A DNA stretch of 64,000 nt from the NCBI RefSeq assembly GCF_030144855.1, contig NC_082736.1, positions 7,378,001-7,442,000 of the forward strand. The letters run 5' to 3'. Source of the stretch: Hypanus sabinus. Taxonomy: Eukaryota. Positions 6,415-60,129 of the stretch are shown one piece after another. Both the position numbers and the translations under genes were made by a program. The notes beneath the pieces are model-generated. The model made no database searches, was not told the DNA's origin, and was given only the letters and a program-made list of their open reading frames with translations. The stretch's first letter is position 1. Each line of letters opens with the position of its first letter.

Positions 6415-7765
6415 TCAGAGGTCAGTAAGTTGATGGAGAAGATACTGAGAGGCCGGATTTATGAAGGCATCATATGATTAGGAATATTCAGCATGGCTTT
6501 GTGAAAGGCAGGTCGTGCCTTACGAGCCTGGTTGAATTTTTTGAGGATGTGACTGCACACAGTGATGAAGGCAGAGCTGTAGATGTAGAGAATATGGAAT
6601 TCAGCAAGGCATTCGATAAGGAACACAATGCAAGGCACATTGAGAAAGTAAGGAGGCATGTAATCCAAGGGGACGTTGCTTTGTGGATCCAGAACTGGTT
6701 TGCCCACAGAAGGCAAAGAGTGGTTATAGAGTTGGTATATTCTACATGGAGGCTGATGAACAGTGGTGTGCCCCAGAGATCTGTACTGGGACCCCTACTT
6801 TTTGTGATTTTTATAAATGACCTGGATGAGGAAGTGGAGGGATGGGTTAGGGAATCTGCTGATAACATAAAAGGTTGGGGGTGTTGTGGATAGTGTGGAG
6901 TGCTGTCAGAGGTAACAGCGGGACATTGATAGGATGCAAATCTGGGCTGAGAAGTGGCAGGAAGGTATGATGTGGTTCATTTTGGTAGTTTGAATATGAT
7001 GGTAGAATGTAGCATTAATGATAAGACTCTTGGCAGTGTGGAGGATCAGAGGTCTGAATCCATAGGACACTTAAAGATGCTAAGCAGTCTGACGTTGTGG
7101 TTAAGAAGGCATACGGTGCCTTGATATTCATTAATCGTAGGATTGAGCTTTGGAGCTGAGAAGTATTGTTGCAGCTATATAAGATCCTGGACAGATCCCA
7201 CTTGGAGTATTGTGCTCAATTCTGGTCGCCTCACTACAGGAAGGATTTGGAAACCATAGAAATGGTTCAAGTGAGATTTACAAGGATGATGCTTGGATTG
7301 GGGAGCATGCCTTATGAGAATAGGTTGAGTGAACTTGGCCTTTTATACTTGGAGCGGCAGAGGATGAGAGGTGACCTGATAGAGGTGTATAAGATGATGA
7401 GAGGCATTGATTGTGTGGATAGTCAGAGGCTTTTTCCAGGACTGAAATGGCTGCCACAAGTGGACACAGGTTTAAGGTGCTGGGGAGTAGGTACTGAGGA
7501 GATGTCAGTGGCAAGTTTTTACATTCAGAGAGTGGTGAGTGCGTGGAATGGGCTGCTGGCAACGGTGGTGGAGGCGGATAAGATAGGGTCTTTTAAAAGA
7601 CTTTCCGATAGGTACATGGAGCTTAGAAAAAGCTATGTCCATGGAGGTACATGGAGCTTCGAGGGCTTTGGGTAAGCCTAGTAAATTCTAAGGTAGGGAC
7701 ATGTTCAGCACAACTTTGTGGGCTGAAGGGTCTGTATTGTGCTGGAGGTTTTCTACGTTTCTATT
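6415..7765 (+). mobile_element. 5'-truncated CR1 LINE (RT C-terminal half plus 3' UTR)
   Basis: [58 protein letters not shown]; CR1 tail ending ttctacgtttctat. Confidence 0.92.
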
Positions 7766-7999
7766 AACTTAATTTGGATTAAAATGTTGACTTTGACTTA
7801 TTTTTCCATAACGTTCTGTTTTCATGCAGAGGTCCAGTGATCCACATACAACGTTATTTCACCCCAAATTATAAAAGATTATATACACAAGATTATACAA
7901 AATACAAACATTAACTATTTATAAGACCGAAAAGTCAAATTAAAATGTGAATATTACTGTCTATAACACACTCAATTCCCGTGGGTGGGGGTGAGGTCA

Positions 8000-8310
8000 C
8001 TGTTCCCGGAAATGCCCCTCTGTACCCACTGTGTTCCAATGCTCTCAGTTTCTCAGTGGCACCACTGATTGACAGGTCTCTCTGACCCCGCCTTCCATCA
8101 CGTGACACCGTGTTGCGATGATGCCGTGTGGCGATTATGACGAGATGAAGACGCCACAGAGGTCCGATCGTCACCGACGTCGTTTCCTAGGGAACGGTCC
8201 GGAATGGTGGGCACGGGGTTGTGGTAAAGTGGAGTCGGTCTCTACTTTGGGTTTTGGCTCCACTGTGGGAATCGGCCTCTCCTCTTCCTGCCCACGGAAC
8301 AGTGAGTGTC
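8000..8310 (+). promoter_or_regulatory. CpG-rich promoter-like module, copy A
   Basis: TTCCCGGAA(AT) STAT/ETS-like site 8003-8013, E-box TCACGTGA 8098-8105, RFX X-box-like GTTTCCTAGGGAAC 8182-8195, possible splice donor GTGAGT ~8302. CpG is retained in an otherwise CpG-poor window. Confidence 0.6.
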
Positions 8311-10224
8311 TGTCAGCGCCTCACCGCACCGGCTCTCTGCCTCAGGTACAATATTTAAACCATATTTGTACAGTTACATGGATAGGAAAGGTTGAGAGGG
8401 ACACGGGCCTAATGCAGGCGGATGGGACGAGTTCAGGTCGACAACTTGGTCGGCCTCGATGAGTTTTACCGAAGGGACGGTTTCAGTTCTGTATAAATCA
8501 CTGACTCTATTCTGGGCGGTTCAACCAGGGCAGGATGTACACAGTGAATGACAGGTTCCTGGGAAGGTTTAATGAACAGAGACTTTGCGGGTTTCTGCCC
8601 CCACACCTCCTCCGGCAGCTGATTTAGGATAGCAGCTATTCTCTGTGTGAAGTATGTACCCTTCAGATCCCCTTTAAATCTGTCTTTAAACAGTTTTGTA
8701 CAATTCTAATGAGAGGCAGTTCTTTGGCTGATAAGGAAAGTACAACACACAACCCTGTCTCTCTGTGATGCCACATGCAGGGAACTGTGTAACAATATTA
8801 GAGACACATGCACAGGCAGTTCAGTGAGCAAGGCCTGGAGGGATATGAAACTAATGCAGGAAAGTGGGATTAGTATAGCTGTGCATGATGGGGAGCATAA
8901 ATGTGATGGGCCAGAGGGTCTGTTTCTATCCTGGCCAACCCTGGTAACAGCAGTCCTCCACTGCAGTGGGGTTTGTTACCTTCATTCTCAGCTGTGAGCT
9001 TGTTCCACTGAACCCCTTATCCTCTGAGAAGATATTTACACCCTTCCATTGTGACCTCCATCTCTCCTGCTATTAACGAGTGTTCTTCACCGAATTCCAA
9101 TTTAAAAGTCCTGTTACTGGTGAACAGGGAATTGGTGCATTTTGATAGCCTTTTGAGGTGTTTGATTCACTATTAACCCTAATGCATTAATTCTGAGTGT
9201 TTTAGGTAAGTCCATCCTGAAGTTCTGTGTTCCAGGTTCCCACTGAACTTTCACAGTCAGTGGTTTCTGCATGTCTATACTGACCATCGAGAATCTGTCT
9301 CCATTAACTCAGCACTTGGTCTGTCTCCTACCCTGACCTAGTGATTCAAATGTTCAGCCAGATGTTCCTTAAATACCAGCCTGCACCTCTCCCTCAGACA
9401 GTGTGTTCCAGATTGTAACCAAGTTCATTTTGCAAGGCAGTTCACTTCCCACTTCAAGATTTGCTAGCCGTCTTTGCTGTCCATCATACCCCTAATCTTG
9501 TTGTCATCTGCAAACTTGCTGATGCAGTTTACCACATTCTCATCCAGATCGTTTATACAGATGGAAAACAACCGTGACGTTAAACCAGGGCAGGATGAAC
9601 AGAGTAATGACAGGTTCCTGGGAAGTGTTCATCAACAGAGACTTTGTTTTTTTTTCCTCCACCACCTCATCTGGCAGCTCATTCGGGATTCTGTGTCAAA
9701 TATTTACCCTTCAGATCCCCTTTAAACTACCCCCCTATCACCTTACAACTATAGCTTTAGACAGCCACACCACGGGAAACAGTCTCTGACACTCTAACTT
9801 TTGTATGCCTCACGTAATTTTATCCACCTCCATCAACTCACCCTTCAGATTCCCTTTCAACCTCCACCCTGTCACGTCTTAGTTTCTGTCTGATTTCTCT
9901 AAATTCACTGCACAGGACACAACCCTCGTATCCCTGCGTTGCTATTACCAACATGCACCGTCCACCAGGACGTCCGGCTGCTCAACCTTCCCTTTGAAAT
10001 ATCCTGCAGCTGCTCCGAGACCATCGGACCATAAGACACAGCAGCAGAATTAGGCCATTTGGCCCATCCAGTCTGCTGCCCCATTCTGCCAGGTGTAAGA
10101 GATCATGACAGATCTCTTAACCCTCTCAAACACTCTTATCCCATCCCACCCCCCCCCCCCCCCACAATCGAGAACCTCCACATTCAATGTACCCAATGAA
10201 TCGGTCACATCCGTCTGAGGGGAT

Positions 10225-10930
10225 GAATTCAGAGTCAGGACCAGAATCAGGTTTATTACCACCGGCAGGTGTCAGGAAATTTGTTAATTTAGCTGCAGCA
10301 GTTCAATGCAGGACATGCTAATATATAAAGATGGTTGCTGCTGGAATAGATTGTGCTTGGTGTGACTTGGGTCCACAATGATCCCTCAGGCCCTTTTCTC
10401 ACACCTGTCTTTGAAACTGTCCTGAATGATGGGAAGTTCACAACTACAGATGCGCTGGGCTGTCCGCAACACACTCTGCAGAGTCCTGCGATTGAGGGAA
10501 GTACAGTTCCCATACTAGGCAGTGATGCAGCCAGTCGGGATGCTCCCAGTTGTGCCCCTGTAGAAAGTTCTTAGGATTTGGGGGCCCAGAGCAAACTTCC
10601 TCAGTTGTCTGCGGTGAACGAGGTGCTGTTGTGCCTTTTCCACCACTCAGCAGGTACGTATAGACCACGTGAGATCCTCGGGTATGTTGATGTCGAGGAA
10701 TTTAAAGCTGTTTACCTTCTCAACCCCAGATCCATTGATGTCCATTGGGGTTAGCCCATCTCCATGAACAATCTGTGTGGATTATCACTAATCCGCACAG
10801 ATTGTGGTCTCCCAGTTAGGAAGTCGAGGATCCATTTGCAGAGGGACCAGGTTCCATTGCTTATTGATCAGGACTGTGGAAATGACGGTGTTAAATGCTG
10901 ATCTCTTGTCACTGAACAACATCCTGACAT
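10225..10930 (-). mobile_element. Rex1/Babar-like LINE remnant
   Basis: Minus strand DGLTPMDINGSGVEKVNSFKFL...EDLTW RT C-terminal motif; mirrored at 55950-56500. Confidence 0.7.
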
Positions 10931-10979
10931 AGGCAGCACAGATTCACTAGCTTTTTCCAAAGAATTTGCTCCTTACCTT

Positions 10980-12130
10980 TGTTCTAACCACTGACCACTG
11001 ACTCGACTGGCAAGTTTATCTTTAGGAAATCCTTCACATCTGAGACGAACCTGACCCCAGTAGCCAGAAGACAACAGACCATCGTGTCATCTCTGTTGCT
11101 GCCACAGAATCTCCTGCACATCCCCTGTACTGTGAGTCTGCTGTCATCACTGCTCTGCTTGACCATTCCTCCCGTGGAGCATCGGTCTGGGGTCTCAGTA
11201 CCACCAACCTGGCGGGCTGCTGTCTCTGGTTCGTCATCCCAGGGGTATCCAAAGGAGTGTACTTGTTGCTGAGGGTCACGGCCACAGGCAGACATTACTC
11301 TGTCTGTCTCTTCCCCTTTCCGTCGTGATGGTCACACAACAGTCTGCATCCTGACCTCAGGTGTGACCAACTCACTGAACCTCTCGTCTCAGCATCCTGG
11401 AAACTCTCGGTCTGTCCATCTCCATCTTCATTTCCTTCACACGGTCAGTCAGGAGCTGCACCTCGGTGCACTTCCCTCATGTGAAGTTATCGGGGACACT
11501 GAGTGACTCCCACATCCTGAGGTGGAGCATTTCACTGCCGTAACTGTAATTCCAGCCACTCTGATGGGGAGAGGAATTCCAAAGAAATCCTCTGACATTT
11601 GACTTCCCAGAGTACACCGACTTATCTCCCATTTCTCTGCCCACATTTCCAGCTGGTCTATGTTCTGCTGAATCCTTTGGAAACTTTCCTCACGATCCAT
11701 AACTGCACCAATTTCTGTGTCTCTGCAGACCAACAAATCAGCCCTCCTTCGTTTTCATCTGAAGCATTTCACAAAAAGCAGAATTTCTTGTGGTGCCCAC
11801 TCTTCACAGGTCTCCAGTCAGAATCACACCCCTCAACCATTACCTTCTGTGTTCTCTGATTGAGTACATTTTGAATATACTCAATCAGATTTCTTTTGAG
11901 CGATGTGCTTCCATGCTGTGGATCAGCCCACCATGGGGACTCTTGTTGAAAGCTTTACCAAAGTCCTTGTGTCCTATACCCACTACCCATCTCTCATCAG
12001 TTGAGTCTGTCACTTAAAACATTCGGCCAAGTTTGCCAGAGTTGACGTTGCCCATGCAATGTGATATTGGCTACTCTGAAATTGTTTATGCTTTTTGTTT
12101 ATGCAAGCTGATCCTATCATTAAATTTCTT
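10980..12130 (-). mobile_element. CR1 ORF1 (zinc finger/esterase) and ORF2 fragments
   Basis: VTLSNKYTPLDT and DTMVCCLL ORF1 motifs, IQQNIDQLEMWAEKW ORF2 motif; mirrored at 54400-55540. Confidence 0.75.
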
Positions 12131-12543
12131 TTGTCTCTGGCCTTGGGCAGAACAACCTGATCTTTTCATTCTGACCCTGCGTCTAAATCGTCATCCAAAC
12201 ATTGGGTTCAGTCGCTTTGATACGATTTGGGGACTGGTACCCACCACCTCGATTTGGCCTGTACCTGACTTTGCCATTTCAGCCCGGAGTTTAAATCAAC
12301 CGTACTTTGGGTCTTCCTCACATTGGTTCTGCCACATCAAATTGCGTCCAAGTTGATAGGAAAGTTACAGGCTATTTGTTTACCAGAAAAAGAGATTCAC
12401 TGGTGTCACTTTAAACCAGAACCAGTGGAGATAACTCTATTTAACTTCACTTAACTCACCACTGAACTGTTTCCCACAATCTATCACTTCACTTTCAAGT
12501 ATTCTGCATGTCATGTTCTCTATTTATTTAATTATGACTATAT

Positions 12544-12830
12544 TGTAGCGGTGTGCTACACGCAGCGCTGAAATAAAGACACGTAGTCGGTAAGCTGCAG
12601 TTGCAAAAGAGGTTTATTCAAACTTGGCGGCCTTGCTTAAAAGCCTTCCTGTTCCTGCCCTCCCCGGGTGGGAATACCTGTAGGGGGCGCATATTCACAG
12701 ACCTGTCCCGCGTGCGGGCTTTTCCTCTTGCTGGTGAAGCAGGCTTGGTGCCCTTTTTGGGACCGGCCTCAATGCCCGCGCTCGCCACTTTGTGAGCCAG
12801 TTCGAGTGCGCTGGGAAGTGGGTCGCTACA
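12544..12830 (-). repeat. Gypsy 3' LTR
   Basis: tgtagcgg...ggtcgctaca; direct repeat of 16255-16505; adjacent to the PPT. Confidence 0.93.
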
Positions 12831-13184
12831 TAACCCCCCCCCCCCCCCACAGAACCGGCGATACACCCCCCAATGTCCTCAGTCTGGGTCGGACTCTGTT
12901 TGGATGGTCTGCCTCTGCGCCGCGGTGCCTGAATCTCGACCGGCTGCGCCAAGTTCACATGGGCCAGTTGGAGTTGGTCCACCGTGAAAACCTCCTCTCT
13001 CCCCACAACGTCCAGCACGAATGTGGACCCGTTGTTTCTGAACACCGTAAACGGCCCCTCATAGGGCCGCTGTAGCGGTGCCCAGTGTCCGCCCTGTCGT
13101 ACAAAAACACAGTTACAGTTTTGCAGGTCGTTGGGAACGCAGGTCGGGTTCTGCCCATGCTGTGAAGTGGGTATGTGGGCCAGG

Positions 13185-13790
13185 TTACCAAGCCTCGCGT
13201 AGTCTGCCCAGGACTGCTGCGGGTTCTTCCTCTTGCCCCCTTGGGGCTGGTATGAACTCTCCTGGGATGACCAGGGGTCCGCCGTGCACCAACTCAGCCG
13301 ACGAGGTATGCAGATCTTCTTTGGGCGCCGTGCGGATTCCGAGCAGGAACCAGGGAAGCTTGTCCACCCAGTTAGGCCCTTTGAGGTGGGCCATGAGAGC
13401 TGATTTCAGATGGAAACGCTCCACTAGTCCGTTCGCTTGTGGGTGGTAGGCAGTTGTGTTTTGCAGCTGTGTCCCCAAAAGGCTGGGCATAGCTGAGCAC
13501 AGGCTGGAGGTGAACTGGGAGCCTCTGTCGGAGGTAATGTGGGCCGGTACACCCAAGTGAGATACCCAGGTTGCAATCAGTGCTCGGGCGCAAGATTCGG
13601 AGGTGGTGTCGGTGAGCGGGACTGCCTCTGGCCATCTTGTGAACCGGTCCACGATAGTCAGGAGGTGCCACGCTCCTCGCGACACTGGCAGGGGCCCACG
13701 ATATCCACATGAATGTGGTTGAAACACCGCCGGGAACTGCTGCGGCAGGGGTTTGTTGTGCCGCTCAGCCTTGGTTGTTTGGCAGTGCAT
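13185..13790 (-). pseudogene. Gypsy integrase core fragment
   Basis: rve-type D..D..E motifs in the 201-aa ORF; frameshifted relative to flanking pol. Confidence 0.9.
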
Positions 13791-14614
13791 TCACGTTTTG
13801 GCCCATTCACTGACCGGCTTGCAGAGTCCGTGCCAAACGAACCTGTTGGCTACCATCCAGACGGTTGACCAGATGGAGGGGTGAGCTAAGTTGTGCATGG
13901 AGATGAAAATGTGCCACCGCCAGGCTGCCAGGATGACGGGGCGCGGTTGGCCAGTGGCGACGTCACAGAGTAGGGTCCTCTCACCTGGGCCTGCAGGGAG
14001 GTCTTGGAGCTGCAAACCGGAGACTGCGGTTCTGTAACTAGGGATCTTCTCGTCTGCCTGCTGTGCCTCCTCCAGCGCTTCATAGTCTACCTGCAGGACA
14101 GGGCTTGGATGTTAGGGCGTCCGCAACGACATTGTCCTTTCCCGAGACATGCTGGACACCCGTCATGCATTCGGAGATGTAGGACAGATGTTGCTGCTGG
14201 TGCTGCTGGACCATGGGTCGGATGCTTTCGTGAACACAAACGTAAGAGTGTTGTCGTCCGTGAACGCGGTAAAGGGCCTACCTTCTAAGAAGTACCTGAA
14301 ATGCCAGATTGCCAGGTTATCACGCCAACAGTTCCCGGTCGAAAGCATTGTATTTGAGCTCGGGTGGTCATAGGTGTTTGCGGAAAAACGCCAGGGGTTT
14401 CCTGCGACCCTCGATGAGTTGTTCCAGCACTCCATCGACTCCATCGTGTTAGATGCGCCACTGTGAGGGCGGTAGGCACGTCCATTCTGGGGTGCACTAG
14501 CATCGCGGCGTTTGCCAAGGCTTCTTTGGTTTTAATGAAAGCGGCGGCGGACTCCTCATCCCAGGTTATGTCCTTGCCCTTATCTGACATCAGGGCGAAC
14601 AGGGGGCACATGAT

Positions 14615-15778
14615 TCAGGCTGCTGAAGGGAGGAAGCGGTGGTAGAAATTTACCATACCCACAAATTCCTGAAGGCCTTTGATTATGTTGGTTCGGGGGA
14701 AATGACGGACCGCGTCTATCTTGGCGGGCAGAGGGGTTGCCCCGTCTTTAGTAATCCTGTGGCCCAGGAAGACGATGGTGTCGACCCGAACTGGCATTTG
14801 GCCGTACTCACTCGGTCGGGTGTAGAGTTGATGAAGGTGGGACAGATGCTCCTGACGACTACTGCTGGCTATGAGGATGTCATCCAAATAGATGAAAGCG
14901 AAGTCCATGTCGCGTTCCACCGCGTCCATTAACCGCTGAAAAGTCTATGCGGCATTCTTTAGGCCGAACGGCATGCGGAGGAATTCGAAAAGGCCGAAAG
15001 GGGTGATGAGTGCCATTTTGGGGACGTCGTCCGGATGCATCGGGATCTGATGGTGTCCCCGGACGAGGTCTACCTCGGAAAAGATCCGTGTGCCATGCAG
15101 GTTTGCTGCAAAGTCCTGAATGTGCGGCACAGGGTAGCGGTCCGGTGTTGTAGCTTCGTTCAGCCTGCGGTAGTTGCCGCATGGTCTCCAGCCCCCTGTT
15201 GCTTTGGGCACCATGTGGAGGGGGGAGGCCCATGGGCTGTCGGACCGCTATATGATCCCCAATTCCTCCATCCTCTTGAACTCCTCCTTTGCCAGTCGGA
15301 GCTTGTCTGGGGGAAGCCTTCGAGGACGGGGTGGTCCTTGTATCGGGATGTGGTGCTGTATGCCGTGTCTGGGCATGGCTGCCGTGAACTTCGGCACCAG
15401 AACCGATGGGAAACCTGCCAGGACTCTGGTGAAGTCATTGTCAGACAGCGTGATGGAGTCGATGTGTGGGGCCGGCAACTGGGCTTCACCCAGGGAGAAC
15501 GTTTGAAAGGTCTCAGCGTGGACCAGTCTCTTCCTTGGCAGGTTGACCAGTAGGCTGTGAGCTCGCAAAAAATCTGCTCCCAGGGGCGGTTGGGCTACAG
15601 CGGCCAGTGTGAAGTCCCACATGAACTGGCTGGAACCGAACTGTAGCTGCACCGTATGGCTGCCGTAGGTCCTTACTGTGCTGCCGTTCGCGGCCCTCAG
15701 GGTGGGACCCGATTCTCTGTGGCGGGTGTCGTAACATGTCGGAGGTAAGACGCTGATGTCGGCTCCGGTGTCAACCAA
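14615..15778 (-). pseudogene. Gypsy protease / reverse transcriptase fragments
   Basis: VDTGADISVLP, WRPCGNYRRLN..PDRYPVPHI, TPFGLFEFLRMPFGLKNAA and YLDDILIASS in separate frames. Confidence 0.9.
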
Positions 15779-16254
15779 AATGCAGCGTCCCGACTGCTTG
15801 TCCCAGACATGCAGGAGGCTATTCTGATACCATGTCTCTATGTGGCATTCCCTGGGAACTTGCAGGGCGGGCTACAGCAACGGGCTTCTGCGCCCCACCG
15901 CTGGTGGTAGAAGCACCATTGTCCGTTGGTCTCCTCACCCCTGCCTCTGGGGTTAGTGGGCTCTGCGGCCAGGCCCGGTCTGGTCTGCTGCTGGGAGCCT
16001 GGCCTGGTGATCTGTGCGACGGACGTCTCACTCTCCTTGGCTTTCCACAGCACGTCTGCCCGGGCCGCCACCTTCCGGGGGGGGCGGGGTCACTGAAATC
16101 CACGTCAGACAGCAGCAGACGTATGTCCTCGGGCAGCTGCTCCAGGGGCGGTCGCAGCGTCCTGAAGCTTGGCAGTTTTAATGAAAATGCAGGAACAGAT
16201 GTGGCGTCGTTCATCTCCGGTCCAAATATCGTTTGGGCCGTCGGGGTCACCAAT

Positions 16255-16505
16255 TGTAGCGGTGTTCTACACGCAGCGCTGAAATAACGACACATAGTCA
16301 GTGAGCTGCAGTTGCAAAAGATGTTTATTCAAGCTGGACGGCCTCGCTTTAGAGCCTTCCTGTTCCCGCGCTCAGTCCCATCCCGTGCGCGGGCTTTTCC
16401 CCTTGTTGGTGAAGCAGGCTTGGTGCCCTCTTTGGGACCAGCCTCAATGCCGGTGCTCGCCACTTTGTGAGCCGGTTCGAGAGAGCTGGGAAGTGGGTCA
16501 CCACA
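16255..16505 (-). repeat. Gypsy 5' LTR
   Basis: tgtagcgg...ggtcaccaca; adjacent to the tRNA-Trp PBS. Confidence 0.93.
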
Positions 16506-16619
16506 ATATTATTATTTTCTCTTTTGTATTTACACAATTTATTGTCGTTTGCACATTGGTGATTTAGCCACCCTGTTGGGTGCGTCTTTCTGTTGTGGTT
16601 CGTGGATTTACTGAGTAAG

Positions 16620-19520
16620 GCCGTACAGCATAGCAGCAGAATTAGGCTATTTGGCCCGTCGAGTCTACTCCCATTCAATCATGGCTGACCCTTTTTTCCC
16701 TTTGCATCCCCACTCCCTGGTCTTCTCCTTGCAAACCTTGATGCCGTGTCCAATCATGAGCCTATCAAGCTCTGCCTTAAGTAGACCCAAGGACATAGCC
16801 TCCACAGCAGCCTGTGGTTATAAATTGCATTAATTCACCACCCTCTGACTAAAGAATTTCTCTGCATTTCTGTTTCAAATGGACAGCCTTCTATCCTGAG
16901 ATTGTGTCTTCTCGTCCTAGACTCCCCCACCATAGGAAGCATCCTTTCCACATCTACTCAGTCTAGGCCTTTCAGCATTTGAAATGAGATTTCCCCCCCC
17001 ACCCATCCTTCGAAATTCCAGCGAGTCCAGACCCAGAGCTATCAAATGTTCCTCGTATGATAACCGTTTCATTCCCAGAATCACCCTTGTGAACTTCTTC
17101 TGAACCCTTTCCAGTGCCAGTACATCTTTTCTTGGATGAGGAGCCCATAACGCTTCACAATCCTCAAGGTGAGGCCTCACCAATGCCTTATAAAGTCTCA
17201 GCATCACATCCCTGCTCTTGTATTCTAACCGCTTGATGTGAATGCTAACATTGCTTTGGCATTCCTCACCTCCGACTGTACCTGCAAGTTATTTTTTGGC
17301 TGGTTTGCACGAAGACTCCAGGTCCCTTTGCATCTCAGATGTTTGGATTTTCTCCCTATTTGGAAAATAGTCTGTACGTGTATTTTTACTACCAAAGTGC
17401 ACGACCATGTATTTTCCAACATTGTATTGTCTTTACCATTGTCTTGCCAATTCTCCTAATCTGTCAAAGTACTTCTAGAGCCTACCTGTTTCCTGAACAG
17501 TACCTGCCCTTATTGTCATCTGCAAACTTGCAACAAATCCATCTATTCCATCGTTTAAATCATTGATAAACAGCATAAACAGAAGTGGTCCCAACACCGA
17601 CCCCTGCGGAACACCACTTCTCACTGGCAGCCAACCAGAAAGGATCCTTTTATTCCCACTTGTTGGCTTGCTGCCTTCTACCAATCAGCCAATGTTCTAA
17701 CCACGCCAGTAACTTACCTGTAATACCATGGGCTATTAACTTGGTAAGCAGCCTCATGTGTGGCACCTTGTCAAAAGCCTTTTGAAAGTCCAAATATATG
17801 ACATCCGTTGCATCCCCTTTATTTATCCTGCGTGTAATCTCTTCAAAGAATTCCAACAGGTTCATTAGGCAAGACTTCCCCTTAAGGAAACCATGCTGAC
17901 TTTGTCCTCTCTTGTTCTGTGTTTCCAATTACTCCATAACCTCATCTTTAACAATTAACTCCAGCATCTTCCCAACCACTGAAGTCAGACTAACTGGTCT
18001 ATAACTTCCTTTCTGCCGCCTTCCTCCTTTCTTAAAGAGTGGAGTGACATTTGCAATTTTCCAGTCCCCTAGCACCACGCCAGAGTCCAATACGTCTTGA
18101 AAGATCATTACTAATGGCACCACAATCTCTACCGCTACCTCTGTCAGAATCCTAGGGTCCTAGGGTCCAGTTCATCTGGTCCAGGTGACTGATATACCCT
18201 CAGGACTTTCAGCTTTTTGAGCACCTTTCCCTTATAATAATAACTGCACTCCCTTCCCTCCCCTCACTCCCTTCAACATCTGGCACATGGCTAGTAACTT
18301 CCACTGATGCCAAATACTCATTTAGTTCATCTGCCATCACCTTCCACCCCCCCCCCACCACCCCATTATTCTTCCTCTGTCCTGATTTTCTAGCAATCCA
18401 GTATCCAGTCTCATCTCTCCTTTATGTTTTACATACTTGAAAAAGCTTCAACGATCCACTTTGATAATATTTGCTAGTTTGCTTGCATATTTAATCTTTA
18501 TCCTCTAGGTTGCTCTCTGTAAGGTGGTAGAAGCTTCCCAATCCTCTGTATTCTATTTTTTTCTTTGTTTTATGCCCTCCCTTTTGGTTTTACATTAGCT
18601 TTGACTTCCTTTTCAGCCACAGTTCTACTATTTTGCCATTTGAGTATTTATTTGTTTCTGGAATACGCTTATCCTGGACTCAAGTTGAACTCAATGATAC
18701 TGTGATCACTGCCTCCTAAGGGTTCTTTTACCTTAAGTTCCCTAATTGCCTGCTGTTCATTAAATAACACACAATCCAGTATAGCTGATTCCCTCGTAGG
18801 TTCAACGACAAACTGCTCTCAAAAGCCATCTCTTAGGCATTCAACAAACTCACTCTCTTGAGATCTATTTCCAACCTGATTCTCCCAATTGACCTGGTTG
18901 TTGAAATCTCCCATGAAATCTCCAATAACATTGCCTTTTGACATGCCTTTTCCATTTCCTGTTGTAATCTGTGGTCCACATCCAAACAACTGTTGGCGGC
19001 CTGTTTATAACTGCATCAATGTCCTTTTACACTTGCAGATTTTTTTAACTCTACTCACAATGATTCAACATCTTCCGATCCAATGGCTCATCTTCCTACT
19101 GATTTGATACCATTCTTTACCAGCAGAGCCATGCTATCCCCATTGCCTACCTTGCTGCCCCTCTGATATGTCTAACTTGGGCATTTAGCTCTCAACTATA
19201 AATATTTTTCAGCTGTGATTCAATGATGATCACATTATACATGACAATCTGTAGTAGGGCAATAAGATTATCCACCTTATTTTTTATATGCTATGCATTG
19301 AGGTACAACACTTCAAGTATTGGATTTGCTACCCTTATTGATTCTGCATCCCTCTGCTGGCTGCAGTTATGTCCTACCATCAGCTCGCTCTTCCTGACAG
19401 TGTGACTGCATGCTATCTTTTCTTTCTTTACCAACTGTACTATCCTAAGTACTTTCATGCCAGTTCTCACGCCCCTGCCAAATCAGTTTATACCCTCCCC
19501 AACAGCTCTAACAAACCAGC
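16620..19520 (-). mobile_element. Long degenerate CR1 LINE (endonuclease-RT-3'UTR)
   Basis: [72 protein letters not shown]. Confidence 0.9.
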
Positions 19521-20684
19521 AGTACGCACACAAGAAAATAAATCCCGGGGTTGCGTATGATGACAGAAATGTATTTTGATATTACATTTACTTTCAGCTT
19601 TGAACTTTGTATTAGAGAGCCGGGTGTTGTACTTGTCTGTGTCCTCACTGGCCGGTGCTGTGCTCTGGCAGCTCAGTGTGCTTGGAATACAGTGTCAGTG
19701 TTTTTACAGAAGTGTGTCCTCATTACACAATTGATCTTGTCCACCCTGGAGTTTGGAAGATTGACTGGAGACCAGAATGATTTTTTCAGGCTGTTATTGG
19801 TCACAGGATCATTCTGGGATGGTCTGGACTATCTGACCCATCAAGTTTATACCAACTCCTGCTACAACATTTCCACAGTCCAATTCCCCTCTCTGTCCCC
19901 ACAGCTCTGCTGGTTATTTCCCCTGAAGAACCTGTCTAATTCCTCTGTGAACACTGGTTGTTCCCGCCACCACTCTGGTGAGTCCCATATTTCCCAAAGC
20001 AAAGTCAAGAATATCTCCCTCCCTGGTGGACCATCTACATACTGTTTCAGGAAACCTTGCTGAACACACTTAACAAATAATGCCCCATCCAAGTCTCAGG
20101 TGGTAAGGGAGTCCCAGTCACTGGGGAGATTATTCACTCAGCAAAGCTACTCTGTTGTTTTTACATCAGCCCATAACCTGCCGACATATCTGTTCCTCTC
20201 TCTCACTGGCTGTTTGGAGTCCTACAGTACAATCCCATAACAGTGATTGCACTCTTCTTATTCCTGAGTTCTACCCGCATTGTCTCACTGGATGACCTTG
20301 AATTTGTGACATTCTGCCTGATCAGCAGTACAGCTCCCCAGCCTCATTCACCTCCCTCTGGACTGTCTGAATCTGAATCCTGGAATGTTTCGCTCCCAGT
20401 CCTGCCCTTCTCTGTAATGGCTGAATCACTGTGCCATGTACTAATCCAGGCTCTAAGTACGTCTGCATTAACTGTTCCACACCCGGCACTGACACAAACA
20501 CACTTCAGCCCCTCGGTGCCACTGTGCTCATTAACTATGCAGTGGTGTACTGGGCAAATGGCATCAACACGGGTTGAAGTCATTCGGACCCTCGGCTCTG
20601 TACTGACTCAACCTATAGCCGGGGAAGTGACGGCACCCCTCATGTTAGACTGTTTGCGGTAACTTTTTATTCTTTCTCTTATTT

Positions 20685-21585
20685 CTAATAGAAACGTAAA
20701 AAATATGTGCAGGAGCAGGCCATTCGGCCCTTTGAGCCTGCACCGCCATTCAGTATGATCATGGCTGATCATCCATCTCAGAACCCTGTACCTGCTTTCT
20801 CTCCGTACCCCCAATCCCTTTAGCCACAAGGGCCATATCTAACTTCCTCTTAAATATAGCCAATGAACTGGCCTCAACTGTTTCCTGTGGCAGAGAATTC
20901 CACAGATTCACCACTCTCTGTGTGAAGAAGTTTCTCCTCATCTCGGTCCTAAAAGGCTTCCCCTTTATCCTTAAACTCTGACCCCTCATTCTGGACTTCC
21001 CCAACATCAGAAACAATCTTCCTGCATCTAGCCTGTCCAATCCCTTTAGAATTTTATACGTTTCAATAAGATGCCCCCTCAATTTTCTAAATTCCAGTGA
21101 GTATAAGCCTAGTAGATCCAGTCTTTCTTCATATGAAAGTCCTGCCATCCCAGGAATCAATCTGGTGAACCTTCTCTGTACTCCCTCTATGGCAAGAATG
21201 TCTTTCCTCAGATTAGGGGACTAGAACTGCACACAATATTCTAGGTGCAGTCTCACCAAGGTCTTGTACAACTGTGGTAGAACCTCCCTGCTCCTGTACT
21301 CAAATCCTTTTGCTATGAATGCCAACATACCATTTGCCTTTTTCACCGCCTGCTGTACCTGCATGCCCACCTTCAATGACACCCAGGTCTCGTTGCATCT
21401 CTCCTTTTCCTAATCGGCCACCATTCAGATAATAATCTGTTTTCCTGTTCTTGCAACCAAAGTGGATAACCTCACATTTATCCACATTAAATTGCATCTG
21501 CCATGAATTTGCCCACTCAACTAACCTATCCAAGTCACCCTGCATCCTCTTAGCATCCTCCTCACAGCTAACACCGCTGCCCAGC
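20685..21585 (-). mobile_element. Relatively young 5'-truncated CR1 LINE
   Basis: Well-preserved ORF2 C-terminus (MQGDLDRLVEWANSWQMQFNVDKCEVIHFG; LSYEERLDLLGLYSLEFRKLRGHLIETYK; FFTQRVVNLWNSLP) and tail. Confidence 0.92.
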
Positions 21586-21764
21586 TTTCCTCCCACTGTC
21601 CAAAGACAAATTGGTTAGTTGGTTAATTGGTCATTGCAAATTGCCACACAAATAGACTAGGGTTAAATTGGAGGCTGCTAAGTGGTGGTGCTCGAAGGCC
21701 TGTTCCATGCTTTATCTCTAAATAAAATATTCCTATAAACACTAAAACCTATTTTGTAAATTTT

Positions 21765-22240
21765 GTCCATCGCAGGTAAAGACCTTCCTCCCACTGAGCA
21801 TATCTACACAAAATGCTATTGCAGGAAAGCAGCATTCATCAGGAACCCCCACCACCCAGGACAAGCTCTCCTCTCTTTGCTGCCATCAAGGAGTTGGTCA
21901 GAGAGCCTCAGGGACCACACCACCGCGTTCAGGAAAAGTTATCATCAGCCCCCTGAGCCAAAAGGGATAACATCACTTGCCCCATCACTGAGTTCTTCCC
22001 ACAGTCTATGGACTCACCTTCAAGGACTCCATCCCATGCTCTCAATATTTATTGTTTGTTTATTTATTTTTCTTTTCTATTTGTATTTACAGAGCTTGTT
22101 GCCTTTTGCACATCAGTTGTTTTTCTGTCCTGTTGGGTGCAGTCTTTTAATGATTCTATTGTTTTTAGTTTTTACTGTGAATGTCCTTAGGGTTGTATAT
22201 GGTGACATATGCATTGATAATAAACTTATCCTGAACTTTG
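21765..22240 (+). mobile_element. Rex1/L2-like LINE 3' remnant
   Basis: IRNPHHPGQALLSLLPS..S..L...TTAFRKSY motif and tail aataaacttatcctgaactttgaa. Confidence 0.65.
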
Positions 22241-25200
22241 AAAATACACCAACTTTGAGCATCATTGATTATTAACAAAATATCATAAAATCTCTTTGAG
22301 GAAGTAATTTTAAGAAACTTTGATATTCTGATATTTTATCTGGAAATTATATACAAGATGTAATACAGCACACAGAAACTTGCTATTCAGCCCAGTCAGG
22401 CTGGAATTTATGCCTCACAAACCTTCTCAATTTTTCTCCATTTAATTATCATTTCTAGCTCTCTCTCTTTCAAATACTTAAGCATTTCAAAGGACTTCAA
22501 AGACTTGCATACATTATTGTGATTGCCACATCACAAAAAATAAGTAATGCTAGTTCAGAGATCTAGATATATAGATAGTTTTAAAGGCTTTATTTAGGAT
22601 ATTTCCTGATCCTTCCCCACTCAAAAGTAGGCATAACAAGCCTATCATCAGTACTTCTTGATTAAAAACTCATGAACCTTTCCCGATTGCTCCATTAAAG
22701 ACCAAAAATTGTGTTAAGTTTCTTTCAGATCCATTTTAAAAAAATAAATGTAAATTTGAGGCCTACCTGGTATTTGTTTATCTGTGCACTTGTAGTGCTA
22801 CTGAGACACTGTAATTTATCTATTTGGACTTACTTTTCTGTGCTGTTCCACATCTGTCAACTCCACTACTGACCTTTCACTCTTCCCAACTCCTCTCCTG
22901 AAAGAGAGCCCAATGATCCATGTAACAAAAATCCTCCGTCCTGCACCAGCTTGTGAGCCACACATAACTGTACCACCTTTTACTTTCTTCCCGCACTAGC
23001 AGGTGACACTGGGATTACCCCCCTCCTCACCACTGCGTTTCTACTTAATTTTTTCCCCAACTCCCTCAGTCTCTTTGCAGGACTTTGTCTCTTTTGTTAG
23101 AACCAATATGGACACGACCTGTGTCTGCTCACCCTGTCCTTTCAGAATGGCCTGTACTTGTTCAGTTACATCCTTGGCCCTGGTATCAGGGAGGTGATGC
23201 ACCATCCTGCAGTGTCTCTCCTTGCCACAGATACACCTGTCTGTGACACAGGCTAAGGACTCCCCCGTCACTGAGGCTCACCGAGAACACAGAACAGTAC
23301 AGCACAGGAATAGGCCCTTCTTCCCATGATGTCTGTGCTGAACACGATGTCAAATGGAACTAAATCTCTTCTGCCTGCGTATAATTCATGTGCTTCAATT
23401 CTCTGAATATTCATGGCTTATCTAAAATGCTGTTAAATGTCATTATCATATCTACTTCCACCACTCCCTAAGGCAACCCGTACTCGGCCCTCACCACTTG
23501 CCGTATGGAAACAGAAATATTACCTGCCCTGAAATAGACTTTTTAATTCTCACCCTGGCATTTTACAGCTGTGCTTTCTCATATTTGATATTTCTAACCT
23601 GAGGAAGTGATTTTGACTGTCTAGCTTGTTGGCACTTCTCATAGTTTTATAAACTTCTGTCAGGTCTCCCCTCAGCCTCCTTCACTCCAGGGAAAACAGT
23701 CCCAGTCAGTCTGATCTTTCCTTGTAACTCAAGCCCCCAGTCCAGGTTCCATTCCTGTGAATCGTTTCTGCACCTTTCCAGCTTAATCACATCCATCCTC
23801 TCGTGGTGACCAGAACTGCACAGGGTACTCCTGGTGTGGGGTAATTATTGATTTGTACAACTGTAATGTGATGTCCCAACTCCTCTCAGAGCCTTTGCTG
23901 ATGAAGGTATGCATTTCATGCACCTTCTTCACCACCTTGTCTACCTGTGTTGGCACTTTCAGGGAACTATTTACCTGTGCCTCAGGTTTATCTTTTCATC
24001 AACACTCCTCAGGACCCTGCCATTCACTGGGTATGTGCTGACCTGCTTTAACTTCCCAAAATCCATCAATGTGCATTTGTCTGACACTGTAGCAACACTG
24101 CTCTGTTTCTCTGCACTAATGCCCCAGCAATAAATGTCAATGAACCACTCACCTCTGAACTTTGGTCATATATGGTCTTATTAACCCCTCACTGCACCCG
24201 TCACTATTTTGTTGTGCAGGCAACACCTCAACAGTCCAGTAGTTATGTCATCCCAGCCTGAAACAGACCTGTTATTCTGTCTCAGTATGATAACCAGTCT
24301 TCAGTCAATATTAACACACTTCCTTCCCAGTACTGAGCTCTGGTCTTGTGCACCAGCCTTTCATGTGAGACATTGGCAAATGGCTCCTGAAAATCCAAAA
24401 TCACCACTTCTCCAACTTCTCCTGTAAAGTCTCAAATCTCTGGTATGTTTGTCAAACATGACTTAACATTCAGTAACCCAGGTTACAGGGACAAAAACCA
24501 GGTTCCAGATGGACAGGGTGGTGACGAGGCTTTTGGAACACCGGCCTTCAGTCAGGGCACCGGATATAGAAGCTGGGATGAAATGGTGCAGTTGTACAAC
24601 ACGTTGGTTTGGCCGCATTTCATAAATAGTGTTTAGTTTTAGTGATCATGCAGTATGACAGACACCATTGAGCTGGAAAGAGTGCAGAGGTGATTTACGG
24701 GCATGTTACTGGATCTCGAAGGACTGATTTGTGGAAAGTGTTTTGGATAATTTTCCTTGGGAAGTTGGAGAATGAGTGGCGATATTGCAGAGGTGTATAA
24801 AATATTAAGTGGCCTGGGTTGAGTCAAAGATAACAATATTTTTGTCAGGGTAGGGGAATCAAGAACTGAAGAGCATTGGTTTGAGATGAGATTTAATAGG
24901 AACCTGAAGGGCAACTTTTCCACACACAGGCTGGTCAGTGTATGGAGTGAGCGGCCGGGGGGTGGTTGAGTCAGGTATATTTAAGAAAAGTACTTGGACA
25001 GGTAGATGGGAAGGAAAGGTTTTGAAGGATATGGGATAAGGAGGAGGATTGCCTTGTTCTTAATGTGGTGGTGAGGGGGTTACAGACCACAAGCTCAGAT
25101 GGGAACTTTGGTCAGTGTGGACCATTTGAGCTGATGGGCTCGTTTCTGTGCTGTGTGAATCTGACTGTAAACCCTGTTGACTCAGTTCAATCACATTAGA

Positions 25201-35842: not shown

Positions 35843-35846
35843 TCTG

Positions 35847-35992: not shown

Positions 35993-36284
<292 letters not shown>

Positions 36285-36965: not shown

Positions 36966-37382
<417 letters not shown>

Positions 37383-45809: not shown

Positions 45810-46000
45810 CAGGCAGGGAATGGAGAAGCCCATTCCATCCCCTCTCATTCTTCCAAAGGGCAGCCAGTACAGACCGACCCCATTTCAGTTCGGTCCCTGC
45901 CACCCCGCTGGGGGTGGGGGGGAAGGAAGCCTCAACGCCACCCCCGGGACCAGGGCGTTCCCCCTCCCTCTCCCGCATCCGTTGCCAAGGAAACGAGTCA
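45810..46000 (-). promoter_or_regulatory. Diverged third copy (C) of the X-box promoter module
   Basis: GTTGCCAAGGAAAC 45981-45994 plus colinear blocks agtacagaccgaccccattt and ggcagggaatggagaagcccattcc matching copy B (agtagagaccgactccacttt; ggcaggaagaggagaggccgattcc). Confidence 0.6.
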
Positions 46001-57410: not shown

Positions 57411-59219
57411 GACTCTGAATTCCTCCCCACAGACGGATGTGGCCAATTCACTGGGTATATTTAATGTGGAGGTTCTCGATTTTTGGGGGGCGGGGGGCGG
57501 GATAAGAGTGTTTGAGAGGGTTAAGAGATCTGTCATGATCTCTTACTCCTGGCAGAATGGTGCAGCAGACAGGATGGGCCAAATGGCCTAATTCTGCTGC
57601 TGTGTCTTATGGTCCGATGGTCTCGGAGCAGCTGCAGGACATTTCAAAGGGAAGGCTGAGCAGCCGGACATCGGGGTGGACGGTGCATGTTGGTAATAGC
57701 AACGCAGGGATACGAGGGTTGTGTCCTGTGTAGTAAATTTAGAGAAATCAGACAGAAACTAAAAAGTAGTAAGCTCTGTATTACTCCCAGTGACACTTGT
57801 TAGTAGGGGGAGATATAGAGAGATACCAGTGATGAACGTGCGACTCAGGAGCTGGTGCAGGGGACAGAGTGCCAGTTTCATGGATCAATGGGACATCTTC
57901 TAGGGATGGGTAGGCAGAAACTGTTCACTCCACAGGGTCTTTTAGGGAAGCAACAGTTTTCTCCGTACTAAAAGTGCACGGTTTAGTTTTGATGTGACAG
58001 GGTGGACATTGAAAGGGAATCTGAAGGGTGAGTTGCTGGAGGTGAATAAAATTACATGAGACATACAAAGGTTAGAGAAGCAGAGGCTGTTTCCAGTGGT
58101 GTGGCTGTCTGAAGCTAAAGGGAATAGTTGTAAGGTAAGAGGGTGTGTTTAAAGGTGATCTGAAGGGTAAATATTTGACACAGAGAATAGCTGGAATCCC
58201 AAATAAGCTGCCAGAGGAGGTGGTGGAGACAAAGGCACACAAAGTCTCTGTTCCTGAACACTTCCCTGGAACCTGTCATTACTGTGTTCATCCTGCCCTG
58301 GTTTAACTTCCCAATGCTGGGTCCATTGTTGTTTTCCATCTGTATAAACGATCTGGATGAGAATGTAGTAAACTGGATCAGTAAGTCTGTGGATGACAAC
58401 AAGATTAGGGGTATGATGAACAGTAAAGCCGGCTAACAAATCTGGATGTGGAATGCGGACCAGCTGGCAAAATGAAGTTGGTTACAATCTGAAGCACACT
58501 TCCTGAGGGAGAGGTGCAGGCTGGTATTTAAGGAACATCTGGCTGAACATTTGAATCACCAGGACAGGGTAGGAGACAGACCAAGTGCTGAGTTAATGGA
58601 GACAGATTCTCGATGGTCAGTAAAGACATGGAGAAACCACAGACTGTGTAAGTTCAGTGGGAACCTGGAACACAGAACTTCAGGATGGATTTACCTAAAA
58701 CACTCAGAACCCAATACGATGGATTTTTGTTGGACAAAGGTATTAATGCATTAGGGTTAATAGTGAATCAAACACCTCAAAAGGCTATCAAAATGCACCC
58801 ATTCCCTGTTCACCAGTAACAGGACTTTAAAATGGGAATTTGATGAAGAACACTGGTTAGTATTAGGAGAGATGGAGGACAGCTTGGTCACAATGGAACG
58901 GTGCAAGTATTTTCTCAGAGGATAAGGGGTTCAGTGGAACAAGCTCACAGCTGAGAATGAAGGTAACAAACCCCACTGCAGTGGAGGACTGCTGTTGCCC
59001 TGGTTGAACCGCCCAGAATAGAGTCAGTGATTTCTACAGAACTGAAACCGTCCCTTCGGTAAAACTCATCCACGCCGACCAAGTTGTCGACCTGAACTCG
59101 TCCCATCCGCCTGCATTAGGCCCGTGTCCCTCTCAACCTTTCCTATCCACGTAACTGTGCAAATATGGTTTGAATATTGTACCTGAGGCAGAGAGCCGGT
59201 GCGGTGAGGCGCTGACAGA

Positions 59220-59530
59220 CACCCACTGTTCCGAGGGCAGGAAGAGGAGAGGCCGATTCCCACAGTGGAGCCGAAACCCAAAGTAGAGACCGACTCCACT
59301 TTACCACAACCCCGTGCCCACCATTCCGCACCGTTCCCTAGGAAACGACGTCGGTGACGTACATCTATGACGTCACATCGTCACAGATAGGCATACGCGC
59401 ATGATATCACGTGACGCGTTGCCAACAGACCTGGAGGCGGGACACAGACACCTGTCAATCAGTGGAGTCGTTGAGAAACTGCAAGCATTGTAACAGAGTG
59501 GGTGCAGAGGGGCATTTCCGGGAACAGTGA
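59220..59530 (-). promoter_or_regulatory. CpG-rich promoter-like module, copy B
   Basis: X-box GTTCCCTAGGAAAC 59333-59346, full CRE TGACGTCA 59368-59375, E-box TCACGTGA 59407-59414, TTCCGGGAA 59516-59524. Confidence 0.62.
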
Positions 59531-60129
59531 CCCAACCCCCCCACCCACGGGAATTGAATGTGTTATAATAAGTAATATTCACATTTTAATTTGACTCTTC
59601 GGTCGTATAAATATTTAATATTTGTATTTTTTTACTTTTGTGTGGATAATCTTTTATAATTTGGGATAGAAAAACGTTGTAACTGGATCACTGAACCCTT
59701 TATGAAAAAAGAACGTTACGGAAAAATATTGTCAAAGTCAACATTTTAATCCAAAGTAATTTAATAGAAGCAGAGAAAACCTACAGCACCAAACAGGACT
59801 TTCGGCCCACAATGTTGTGACGAACATGTCCTTACTTTAGGAATTACTGGGCTTACCTATCGAAAAGTCTCTGAAAAGACCCTATTGTATCTGCCTCCAC
59901 CACCGTTGCGGGCAGCCCATTCCACGCACTCACCACTCTCTGAGTAAAAAACTTACCCCTGACATCTCTGTACCTGCTCCCCAGCACCTTAACCTGTGTC
60001 CTCTTGTTGCAGCCAGTTCAGCCCTGAGAAAAAGCCTCTGACTGTCCACACGATCGATGCCTCTCATCATCTTGTACACCTTGGGCCTAAAGGAAACGAT
60101 GCTGACTTTGTCCTATTTTATCATGTGTC

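What the first reader, a model, noticed from the sequence alone, without database searches (positions are those of the whole stretch)
8000..8310. Orphan RFX X-box/CRE/E-box promoter module with no visible coding gene; copies A and B face each other
Seen: the main non-TE, CpG-retaining island in the duplicated arms has TTCCCGGAA, TCACGTGA, CRE or CRE-like motifs and a near-palindromic GTTTCCTAGGGAAC. About 110 nt later comes a donor-like GTGAGT (GTGGGT in copy B at 59220-59530). Established: GTT.CC..GG.AAC is the RFX X-box, typical of ciliary and spermatogenic promoters. Inference: this is a promoter plus non-coding first exon whose downstream sequence is mostly antisense TE debris. In the left arm, Rex1, CR1 and Gypsy all lie on the minus strand. 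That layout resembles a germline lncRNA or piRNA-precursor locus, with the two copies firing convergently toward the histone genes.
Basis: partly seen in the sequence, partly recalled or inferred. Interest (0 to 1): 0.7.

Follow-up and report, generated by a model that had tools for sequence, protein, structure and literature searches.

The report
Stingray promoter driving TE-spliced non-coding RNA
A small CpG-rich promoter with an RFX-type X-box, present as two facing copies beside histone genes in a ray genome, drives a short non-coding first exon that is spliced 13 kb downstream onto a piece of a transposon; this is an ordinary kind of non-coding RNA gene, and its exon occurs in tens of copies.

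Summary
All the reported motifs are present in both copies, and the copies do face each other. A is on + at 7990-8345 and B is on - at 59537-59183. The X-box pattern occurs 3 times in 64 kb, against 0.11 expected. The island has a CpG o/e of 1.0-1.1, against 0.46 for the window.

The reading "promoter plus non-coding first exon" is supported, with one correction. Three public contigs read straight through the proposed donor at 8302. They break at 8345 (CAG|GTACAA). One contig continues with 30 letters that match window 21779-21808 (29/30), directly behind an AG at 21775. This defines a GT-AG intron at 8346-21775. Exon 2 is a sense-oriented, 5'-truncated retrotransposon tail with an AATAAA at 22219.

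The exon block is not unique. Its depth in a DNA run is 4-20 times that of its flanks, which implies tens of copies and not thousands. Parts of it occur in runs of many coded organisms. A third, older copy lies at 45994-45812 (-).

There is no ORF, Pfam, Rfam or folding signal. The piRNA-precursor idea and germline expression remain untested, and no downstream exon was found for copy B. First readers of this scan noted similar modules elsewhere in this genome; I did not check those.

The parts
8000..8550 (+). CpG island of copy A (promoter, exon 1, start of intron 1)
   Evidence: CpG o/e is 0.97-1.11 at 8000-8300 and 0.8-0.9 up to about 8550. It falls to 0-0.3 beyond that point, and the window mean is 0.46.
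8003..8011 (+). TTCCCGGAA palindrome (GAS/ETS-like)
   Evidence: It is present in A and B only.
8066..8075 (+). TGATTGACAG (PBX-MEIS/PKNOX-type site)
   Evidence: It is present in A and B only and is identical in both.
8098..8105 (+). E-box TCACGTGA
   Evidence: B keeps the motif, but about 18 nt away in the alignment.
8083..8168 (+). Hypervariable CpG-rich spacer with CRE half-sites
   Evidence: A and B are only about 55% identical here. The differences are 15 gap columns and 15 transversions, so this is not simple CpG decay.
8182..8195 (+). RFX-type X-box GTTTCCTAGGGAAC, abutted upstream by the CRE-like CGTCACCGACGTC
   Evidence: There are 3 matches in the window against 0.11 expected. The stretch 8169-8195 is identical in A and B.
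8197..8345 (+). Exon 1, non-coding (the 5' limit is inferred)
   Evidence: Contigs cover 8197-8321, 8238-8345 and 8224-8348 without a break. The RNA-like runs give no contig depth over 7797-8190. The exon holds only a 7-codon ORF and has no Pfam or Rfam hit.
8302..8307 (+).
   Evidence: Three contigs from three runs read through it.
8346..21775 (+). Intron 1 (13,430 nt, GT..AG), filled with TE pieces; all the ORF-bearing ones are antisense
   Evidence: The contig junction is and its continuation was located.
8343..8532 (+). 5'-truncated LINE 3' tail; its first letters supply the donor CAG|GT
   Evidence: It aligns to other LINE tails in the window from 8344-8348 onwards, and at protein level from about 8336.
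21776..22245 (+). Exon 2: a sense-oriented, 5'-truncated retrotransposon tail with AATAAA at 22219-22224 (the 3' end is inferred)
   Evidence: The acceptor is a pyrimidine-rich tract followed by CAG|GTAAAG. It matches the contig's continuation at 29 of 30 letters and is the only such site in the window.
59183..59537 (-). Copy B of the module (X-box at 59333-59346, exon-1 equivalent 59331-59183, donor kept)
   Evidence: It is 85% identical to A overall and 97% from the X-box onwards.
45812..45994 (-). Copy C, an older paralog: X-box GTTTCCTTGGCAAC plus a diverged exon-1-like stretch, with no LINE tail
   Evidence: The X-box match is. The local alignment scores 23, against maxima of 21.5 in 500 shuffles and 17.5 in 940 real chunks of the window.

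Best explanation
Copy A is a CpG-island RNA polymerase II promoter. Its motifs run in a fixed order: GAS/ETS-like site, PBX-MEIS site, E-box, CRE half-sites, then an RFX X-box directly at the start of the transcribed part. It drives a 149-nt non-coding first exon, about 8197-8345. That exon ends at a donor (CAG|GTACAA) formed by the first letters of an old 5'-truncated LINE fragment. It is spliced over a 13.4-kb intron, filled mostly with antisense transposon debris, to a terminal exon at 21776. The terminal exon is itself a sense-oriented, 5'-truncated retrotransposon tail that supplies both the acceptor and a poly(A) signal. The product is a TE-terminated long non-coding RNA. The promoter-plus-exon unit belongs to a family of tens of copies. 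The family most likely spread by DNA-level duplication in and around the histone clusters of this ray genome. A and B are one inverted pair and C is an older member. Shown here: the motifs, the CpG retention, the duplication, the junction contig and the copy-number ratio. Inferred: that the junction contig is RNA, the start site, RFX binding, the poly(A) site, and germline activity. Germline activity is suggested only by the survival of CpGs in both copies.
For: Motifs and their rarity are, and the CpG island in both copies is. Contigs from three runs cover 8197-8345 without a break, and two of them stop matching at 8345 and 8348. The 30-letter continuation of the X26 contig matches 21779-21808 at 29/30. 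That site is the only match in the window, lies on the same strand, and sits directly behind a pyrimidine tract and AG. Both contigs still include the LINE-derived CAG before the break, as expected for a splice and not for a LINE-free paralog. The runs guessed to be RNA give zero depth over 7797-8190, although the DNA run has depth 5-12 there. RFX2 sites lie very close to the start site in most mouse testis targets (PMC4498915). There is no ORF beyond 7 codons, no Pfam, Rfam or protein homologue, and no fold signal. All four ORF-bearing TE insertions in the intron are antisense. Copy C keeps the X-box and exon but lacks the LINE tail, so that pairing is older than the LINE insertion.
Against: The runs are RNA only by the tool's guess. 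The splice rests on one contig, from a different coded organism, and only 30 letters of its continuation were shown. The continuation lies in a TE, so a similar copy elsewhere in that genome could be its true source. The donor GTACAA is weak, and the stronger GTGAGT at 8302 goes unused. In the RNA-like runs the LINE tail just past the donor has almost the same depth as the exon (X27: 191 against 140), which is unlike a cleanly spliced exon. No exon 2 was found for B. The exon block is far more abundant in DNA than the promoter (44 against 4.8), which also fits a mobile unit.
Confidence: 0.55

Rival explanations
1. The block 8197-8532, a unique head plus a LINE 3' tail, is an interspersed SINE-like retroposon copied by the LINE machinery. 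The CpG-rich motif cluster is then the promoter of a source copy or merely a flank. The contig breaks at 8345 are head-to-tail chimeras, not splices.
For: DNA depth is 44 and 31 inside the block, against 4.8 just upstream and 2-7 downstream once the A-specific insertion is set aside. The head abuts a LINE tail. Head and tail have similar depth in X25 and X27. Parts of the block are held by runs of many coded organisms.
Against: The continuation of the X26 contig begins exactly after an AG at a site 13.4 kb downstream on the same strand of this window. The head shows no tRNA, 5S, 7SL or snRNA likeness. Copy C has the X-box plus head without a LINE tail. About a third of the DNA reads at 8203 extend upstream of 8197, and the upstream flank 7797-7993 is itself at depth 12. 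Copy number is in the tens, which is low for a SINE.
Confidence: 0.15
2. One reading: the unit is a germline uni-strand piRNA-precursor locus. A promoter and a short spliced first exon are followed by a body of antisense TEs, and A and B fire convergently.
For: All four ORF-bearing TE insertions in the 13.4-kb body are antisense. CpG retention suggests a germline-unmethylated promoter. X-box and CRE motifs are typical of spermatogenic promoters (PMC2797782, PMC4498915). The unit is multi-copy.
Against: No small-RNA data could be examined. Antisense TE bias is also normal for ordinary introns. The transcript seen is spliced to a terminal exon with a poly(A) signal only 14 kb away. Copy A has no MYB-type site (YAACNG) in 7980-8350, whereas the known vertebrate pachytene clusters depend on A-MYB (titles and abstracts). 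Nothing shows that B is transcribed.
Confidence: 0.1
3. The island is read in the other direction, or in both. The X-box with the CRE-like site abutting it would be an MHC-type X1-X2 pair serving a leftward (minus-strand) gene, and the plus-strand RNA would be a by-product.
For: On the minus strand the X-box is followed at once by GACGTCGGTGACG, an X1-X2-like arrangement. The LINE at 6474-7760 lies on the plus strand, which is antisense to a leftward transcript.
Against: There is no Y box (CCAAT/ATTGG) at the canonical 15-20 bp. The only CCAAT is about 130 nt away, in A alone. No contig covers 7797-8190 in the RNA-like runs. The observed junction is GT-AG on the plus strand only.
Confidence: 0.05

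Closest known systems
RFX (X-box) dependent promoters of spermatogenic and ciliary genes (Alf/Gtf2a1l, histone H1t, Spag6; PMC2797782, PMC4498915)
   Same: Both have a 14-bp inverted-repeat X-box, here with a CCTAGG centre, placed within a few nucleotides of the apparent transcript start in a CpG-rich, TATA-less promoter that also carries CRE-type sites.
   Different: Here the target is a non-coding exon in tens of copies, not a single protein-coding gene. RFX binding and tissue of expression are untested.
Vertebrate lncRNAs with transposon-derived splice sites and terminal exons (own knowledge: Kelley and Rinn 2012; Kapusta et al. 2013)
   Same: The donor comes from a LINE fragment, and the acceptor and poly(A) signal come from another retrotransposon tail. 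There is no ORF, and the gene has two exons.
   Different: The promoter and first exon are multi-copy and occur in several species' runs, which is more conservation than is typical of young TE-built lncRNAs.
Uni-strand piRNA precursors (Drosophila flamenco; A-MYB/TCFL5-driven pachytene precursors of mammals and birds)
   Same: A Pol II promoter and a short spliced first exon are followed by a transcribed body rich in antisense TEs.
   Different: The body is only 13-14 kb, copy A has no MYB site, and there is no small-RNA evidence. Membership is not claimed.
LINE-tailed SINEs of elasmobranchs such as HE1 (own knowledge: Ogiwara et al. 1999)
   Same: A unique head is joined to a LINE 3' tail, is repeated in the genome and is shared among species.
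   Different: The head shows no Pol III-type likeness (tRNA, 5S or 7SL), copy number is only in the tens, an external CpG-island promoter is attached, and an older paralog lacks the tail.

Membership tests
RFX/X-box promoter | Match to the 14-bp inverted repeat GTNRCC(N0-3)RGYAAC | tested here: met
   GTTNCCNNGGNAAC occurs at 8182, 59333 and 45981: 3 hits against 0.11 expected.
RFX/X-box promoter | Site lies close to the transcription start | tested here: inconclusive
   The 5'-most contig starts at 8197, 2 nt after the X-box, and the RNA-like runs give no depth upstream. Contig ends are not start sites, however, and the runs are RNA only by guess.
RFX/X-box promoter | RFX occupancy and X-box-dependent activity | not testable with these tools
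   This needs ChIP and a reporter with a mutated X-box.
CpG-island Pol II promoter | CpG o/e above 0.6 and G+C above 50% over at least 200 bp | tested here: met
   CpG o/e is 0.97-1.11 and G+C is 0.56-0.57 over 8000-8300, with the same values in B.
Spliced TE-exonised lncRNA | Exon-exon junction with a GT-AG intron seen in RNA | tested here: inconclusive
   One contig joins 8345 to the sequence at 21776. The run is RNA only by guess and comes from another coded organism.
Spliced TE-exonised lncRNA | No conserved ORF | tested here: met
   The longest exon-1 ORF from an ATG is 7 codons. The 114-aa ORF at 8118-8462 is not kept in B and has no Pfam hit or homologue.
piRNA precursor locus | 24-31-nt, 1U-biased small RNAs map densely to it | not testable with these tools
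piRNA precursor locus | A-MYB-type site at the promoter (vertebrate pachytene class) | tested here: not met
   There is no YAACNG in 7980-8350 of A. B has two.
SINE / LINE-tailed retroposon | Pol III-type head (tRNA, 5S, 7SL or snRNA derived) | tested here: not met
   There is no Rfam match, even at E up to 1, over 7900-8600.
SINE / LINE-tailed retroposon | 3' tail shared with a partner LINE | tested here: met
   The stretch 8343-8532 aligns to LINE tails of the window.
SINE / LINE-tailed retroposon | Copies end at fixed limits in unrelated flanks | tested here: inconclusive
   DNA depth drops on both sides of the block. However, the upstream flank is also multi-copy, and a third of the reads at 8203 run further upstream.
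MHC-type S-X-X2-Y module | Y box (CCAAT) 15-20 bp beyond X2 | tested here: not met
   The only CCAAT is at 8036, about 130 nt away and absent from B.

The most novel reading that the evidence does not exclude
The unit is one member of a conserved, multi-copy family of RFX/CREB-driven germline transcription units embedded in the histone clusters of rays. These units would act as uni-strand piRNA (or convergent double-stranded RNA) sources against the LINEs and LTR elements lying antisense in their bodies. That would be a flamenco-like design in a cartilaginous fish, driven by RFX and not by A-MYB.
Probability: 0.08. Interest if true: 0.65.

Novelty: new member of a known kind. Interest (0 to 1): 0.3.

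Why it matters
If the main reading holds, this is a clear example of new non-coding genes being assembled from spare parts in a ray genome. A duplicated CpG-island promoter and first exon take their donor, acceptor and poly(A) signal from three unrelated transposon fragments. It also gives annotators of elasmobranch genomes a repeated promoter and exon family to recognise near histone clusters. The family allows a paralog-footprinting test of which motifs matter, since the X-box, PBX-MEIS site and E-box are kept while the spacers are scrambled. It would matter more only if the family proves to be germline-specific and a source of small RNAs.

Tried and rejected
- **Known RNA families.** Rfam at gathering threshold over the whole window, and at E up to 1 over 7900-8600, gave nothing at the module.
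- **RNA structure.** Folding exon 1 gave a z-score of 0.05, so there is no structure signal.
- **Protein searches.** I searched the open frame through exon 1 and the TE ORF of exon 2, hoping to fetch transcripts or paralogs. Neither found a homologue. Pfam found nothing on either ORF.
- **Other collections.** An exact-pattern scan of metagenome contigs with a 45-nt exon core gave 0 hits. A look-up by sequence in the scan's earlier findings was blank.
- **"8169-8532 is unusually conserved between A and B."** Rejected. It is 97% identical, but other stretches of the arms reach 97-99% (9147-9246 and 11447-11746).
- **"The hypervariable spacer is CpG decay."** Rejected. Only 6 of 31 substitutions are CpG transitions, and there are 15 gap columns.
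- **"Exon 1 is itself decayed LINE coding sequence."** Not supported. Nucleotide and protein alignments upstream of about 8336 are at noise level.
- **"MHC-type SXY module."** Rejected, because there is no Y box.
- **Exon 2 for copy B.** There is no second copy of the exon-2 TE in the window.

Full report
**Context**

The window has the repeat landscape of a cartilaginous fish. Follow-up notes of this scan call the genome a stingray, which I did not verify. The window holds:
- an intact histone H3 (36972-37382, +) and an H1 (38263-38880, -) with its stem-loop;
- an H4 that lacks its N-terminus (36036-36284, +);
- a tRNA.

The rest is almost entirely transposon debris. An inverted duplication pairs 7383-18679 with 60081-50024 at about 92% identity. 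An LTR retrotransposon at 12486-16508, with integrase, RT and protease on the minus strand, and a LINE tail at 8533-8946 are present in the left arm only.

**Checking the observation**

- Copy A carries TTCCCGGAA (8003), TGATTGACAG (8066), TCACGTGA (8098), TGACG half-sites (8138, 8169), GTTTCCTAGGGAAC (8182-8195) and GTGAGT (8302).
- Copy B carries the same order on the minus strand.
- B alone has a full TGACGTCA, and A alone has a CCAAT.
- The X-box pattern occurs three times in 64 kb against 0.11 expected.
- Two other motifs occur only in A and B.
- Both copies are small CpG islands, with o/e of about 1.0-1.1 against 0.46 for the window.

**What the public reads show**

No run holds the whole stretch. 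Runs of at least sixteen coded organisms hold a quarter to a half of its sampled words. The single read-laying run allowed gave four results.

1. *The proposed donor is not used.* Three contigs, from three runs guessed to be RNA, cover 8197-8321, 8238-8345 and 8224-8348 without interruption.
2. *Two contigs stop matching at 8345 and 8348.* They then run on for 153 and 115 letters that are unlike the window.
   - The first 30 of the 115 letters match window 21779-21808 at 29/30. This is the only such site in the window, and it is on the same strand.
   - The three letters before that site (GTA) are shared with 8346-8348.
   - Directly in front of it stand a pyrimidine-rich tract and AG.
   - Together this is what a GT-AG intron from 8346 to 21775 would give.
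3. *There is nothing upstream in the RNA-like runs.* The two RNA-like runs of organism C show no depth over 7797-8190, where a DNA (Hi-C) run has depth 5-12.
4. *The exon block is multi-copy.* In the DNA run, depth is 44 over the exon and 31 over the LINE tail behind it. It is 4.8 over the motif cluster, 2-12 over most of the arm, and 500-2500 over real high-copy TEs.
   - Nearly all reads carry G at 8203 and C at 8255, unlike copy A.
   - The exon block is thus a family of tens of copies.
   - I give ratios only, because the run's species and genome size are unknown to me.

**Anatomy of the transcription unit**

- Exon 1 runs from about 8197 to 8345.
- From about 8343 (by DNA) or 8336 (by protein) the sequence is a 5'-truncated LINE 3' tail. 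The donor CAG|GT is therefore made of the first letters of that fragment.
- Both contigs keep the LINE-derived CAG before they break. This fits a splice better than a paralog that lacks the LINE.
- Exon 2 (21776 onwards) is a sense-oriented, 5'-truncated retrotransposon tail. Its own reading frame begins a few codons upstream of the acceptor. It carries the only AATAAA of the stretch, at 22219.
- The intron contains four ORF-bearing TE insertions, all antisense.
- I found no coding capacity. Exon 1 has a 7-codon ORF. The 114-aa ORF at 8118-8462 is not kept in B and has no Pfam hit or homologue.
- There is no Rfam match and no folding signal.

**Comparing the copies**

- A and B are 84-88% identical upstream of the island.
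- They are about 55% identical in the CpG-rich spacer 8083-8168. The differences there are indels and transversions, not CpG decay.
- They are 97% identical from 8169 to 8532. That last figure is not exceptional, since other stretches of the arms reach 97-99%. I do not read it as selection on the exon.
- The motif set and its order are kept even though the spacer is scrambled.
- A third copy, C (45994-45812, minus), has a perfect X-box followed by a diverged exon-like stretch. Its alignment score exceeds all 500 shuffles and all 940 real control chunks. It has no LINE tail, so the pairing of X-box with this exon is older than the LINE insertion.
- First readers of this scan noted similar promoter modules 82 kb, 0.86 Mb and 1.06 Mb upstream, and on another piece, some in inverted duplications at histone genes. 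I could not inspect those.

**Interpretation**

The best reading (0.55) is a CpG-island promoter with an X-box at the start site. It drives a non-coding exon that is spliced onto a TE-derived terminal exon. The unit has been multiplied by DNA-level duplication. In mouse testis, RFX2 sites lie very close to the start site in most target genes (PMC4498915), and an X-box is known in the histone H1t promoter (PMC2797782). The layout is therefore typical. CpG retention in both copies suggests a germline-unmethylated promoter, but that is an inference.

The main rival (0.15) is that 8197-8532 is a LINE-tailed retroposon. This explains the DNA depth profile and the similar depth of head and tail. It does not explain:
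- the AG-flanked match 13.4 kb downstream;
- copy C;
- the absence of any Pol III-type head.

Copy A lacks the MYB site typical of known vertebrate pachytene clusters. An MHC-type S-X-X2-Y reading fails for want of a Y box.

**Limits**

- The runs are RNA only by the tool's guess.
- The splice rests on one contig from another coded organism.
- The continuation of the second contig was not shown.
- Contig ends are not transcript ends.
- Nothing was learnt about transcription of B.

**Verdict**

It is an ordinary kind of gene: a TE-built lncRNA from a duplicated promoter. It is a new member of a known kind and of modest interest.

Noticed in passing
window 36036-36284 (+): A histone H4 reading frame lacks its N-terminal 20 or so residues. 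The frame runs from ...[12 protein letters not shown] to ...LYGFGG and a stop, and TE-like sequence lies upstream. It is a truncated H4 copy next to the intact H3.
   Followed up: partly
window 8533-8946: A LINE-tail insertion is present in arm A only. It is flanked by a diverged 12-bp target-site duplication (TCAACCAGGGCA / CCAACCCTGGTA), so it is younger than the inverted duplication.
   Followed up: yes
window 12486-16508 (-): An LTR retrotransposon with LTRs at 12542-12830 and 16253-16505 carries integrase, RT and protease ORFs broken into pieces. It is present in the left arm only.
   Followed up: partly
window 45812-45994 (-) relative to 59183: Copy C lies 13.2 kb downstream of B's donor on the same strand. 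That is nearly the same distance as A's exon 2 lies from A's donor (13.4 kb). The two downstream sites share no homology, so this is probably chance.
   Followed up: no
window 8083-8168 vs 59360-59440: This spacer is far more diverged between A and B than anything around it (55% identity). It keeps its high CpG content and its motif types, and the E-box sits about 18 nt away in the alignment. A segment replacement or conversion from another family member is possible.
   Followed up: partly
window 29514-29845 and 35508-35846: A second, inner inverted repeat (88% identical) brackets the region just upstream of the H4 and H3 genes.
   Followed up: no
window 7797-7993: The AT-rich stretch upstream of the island is itself multi-copy in the DNA run (depth about 12). 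All 10 reads at 7932 carry the B-type letter.
   Followed up: no
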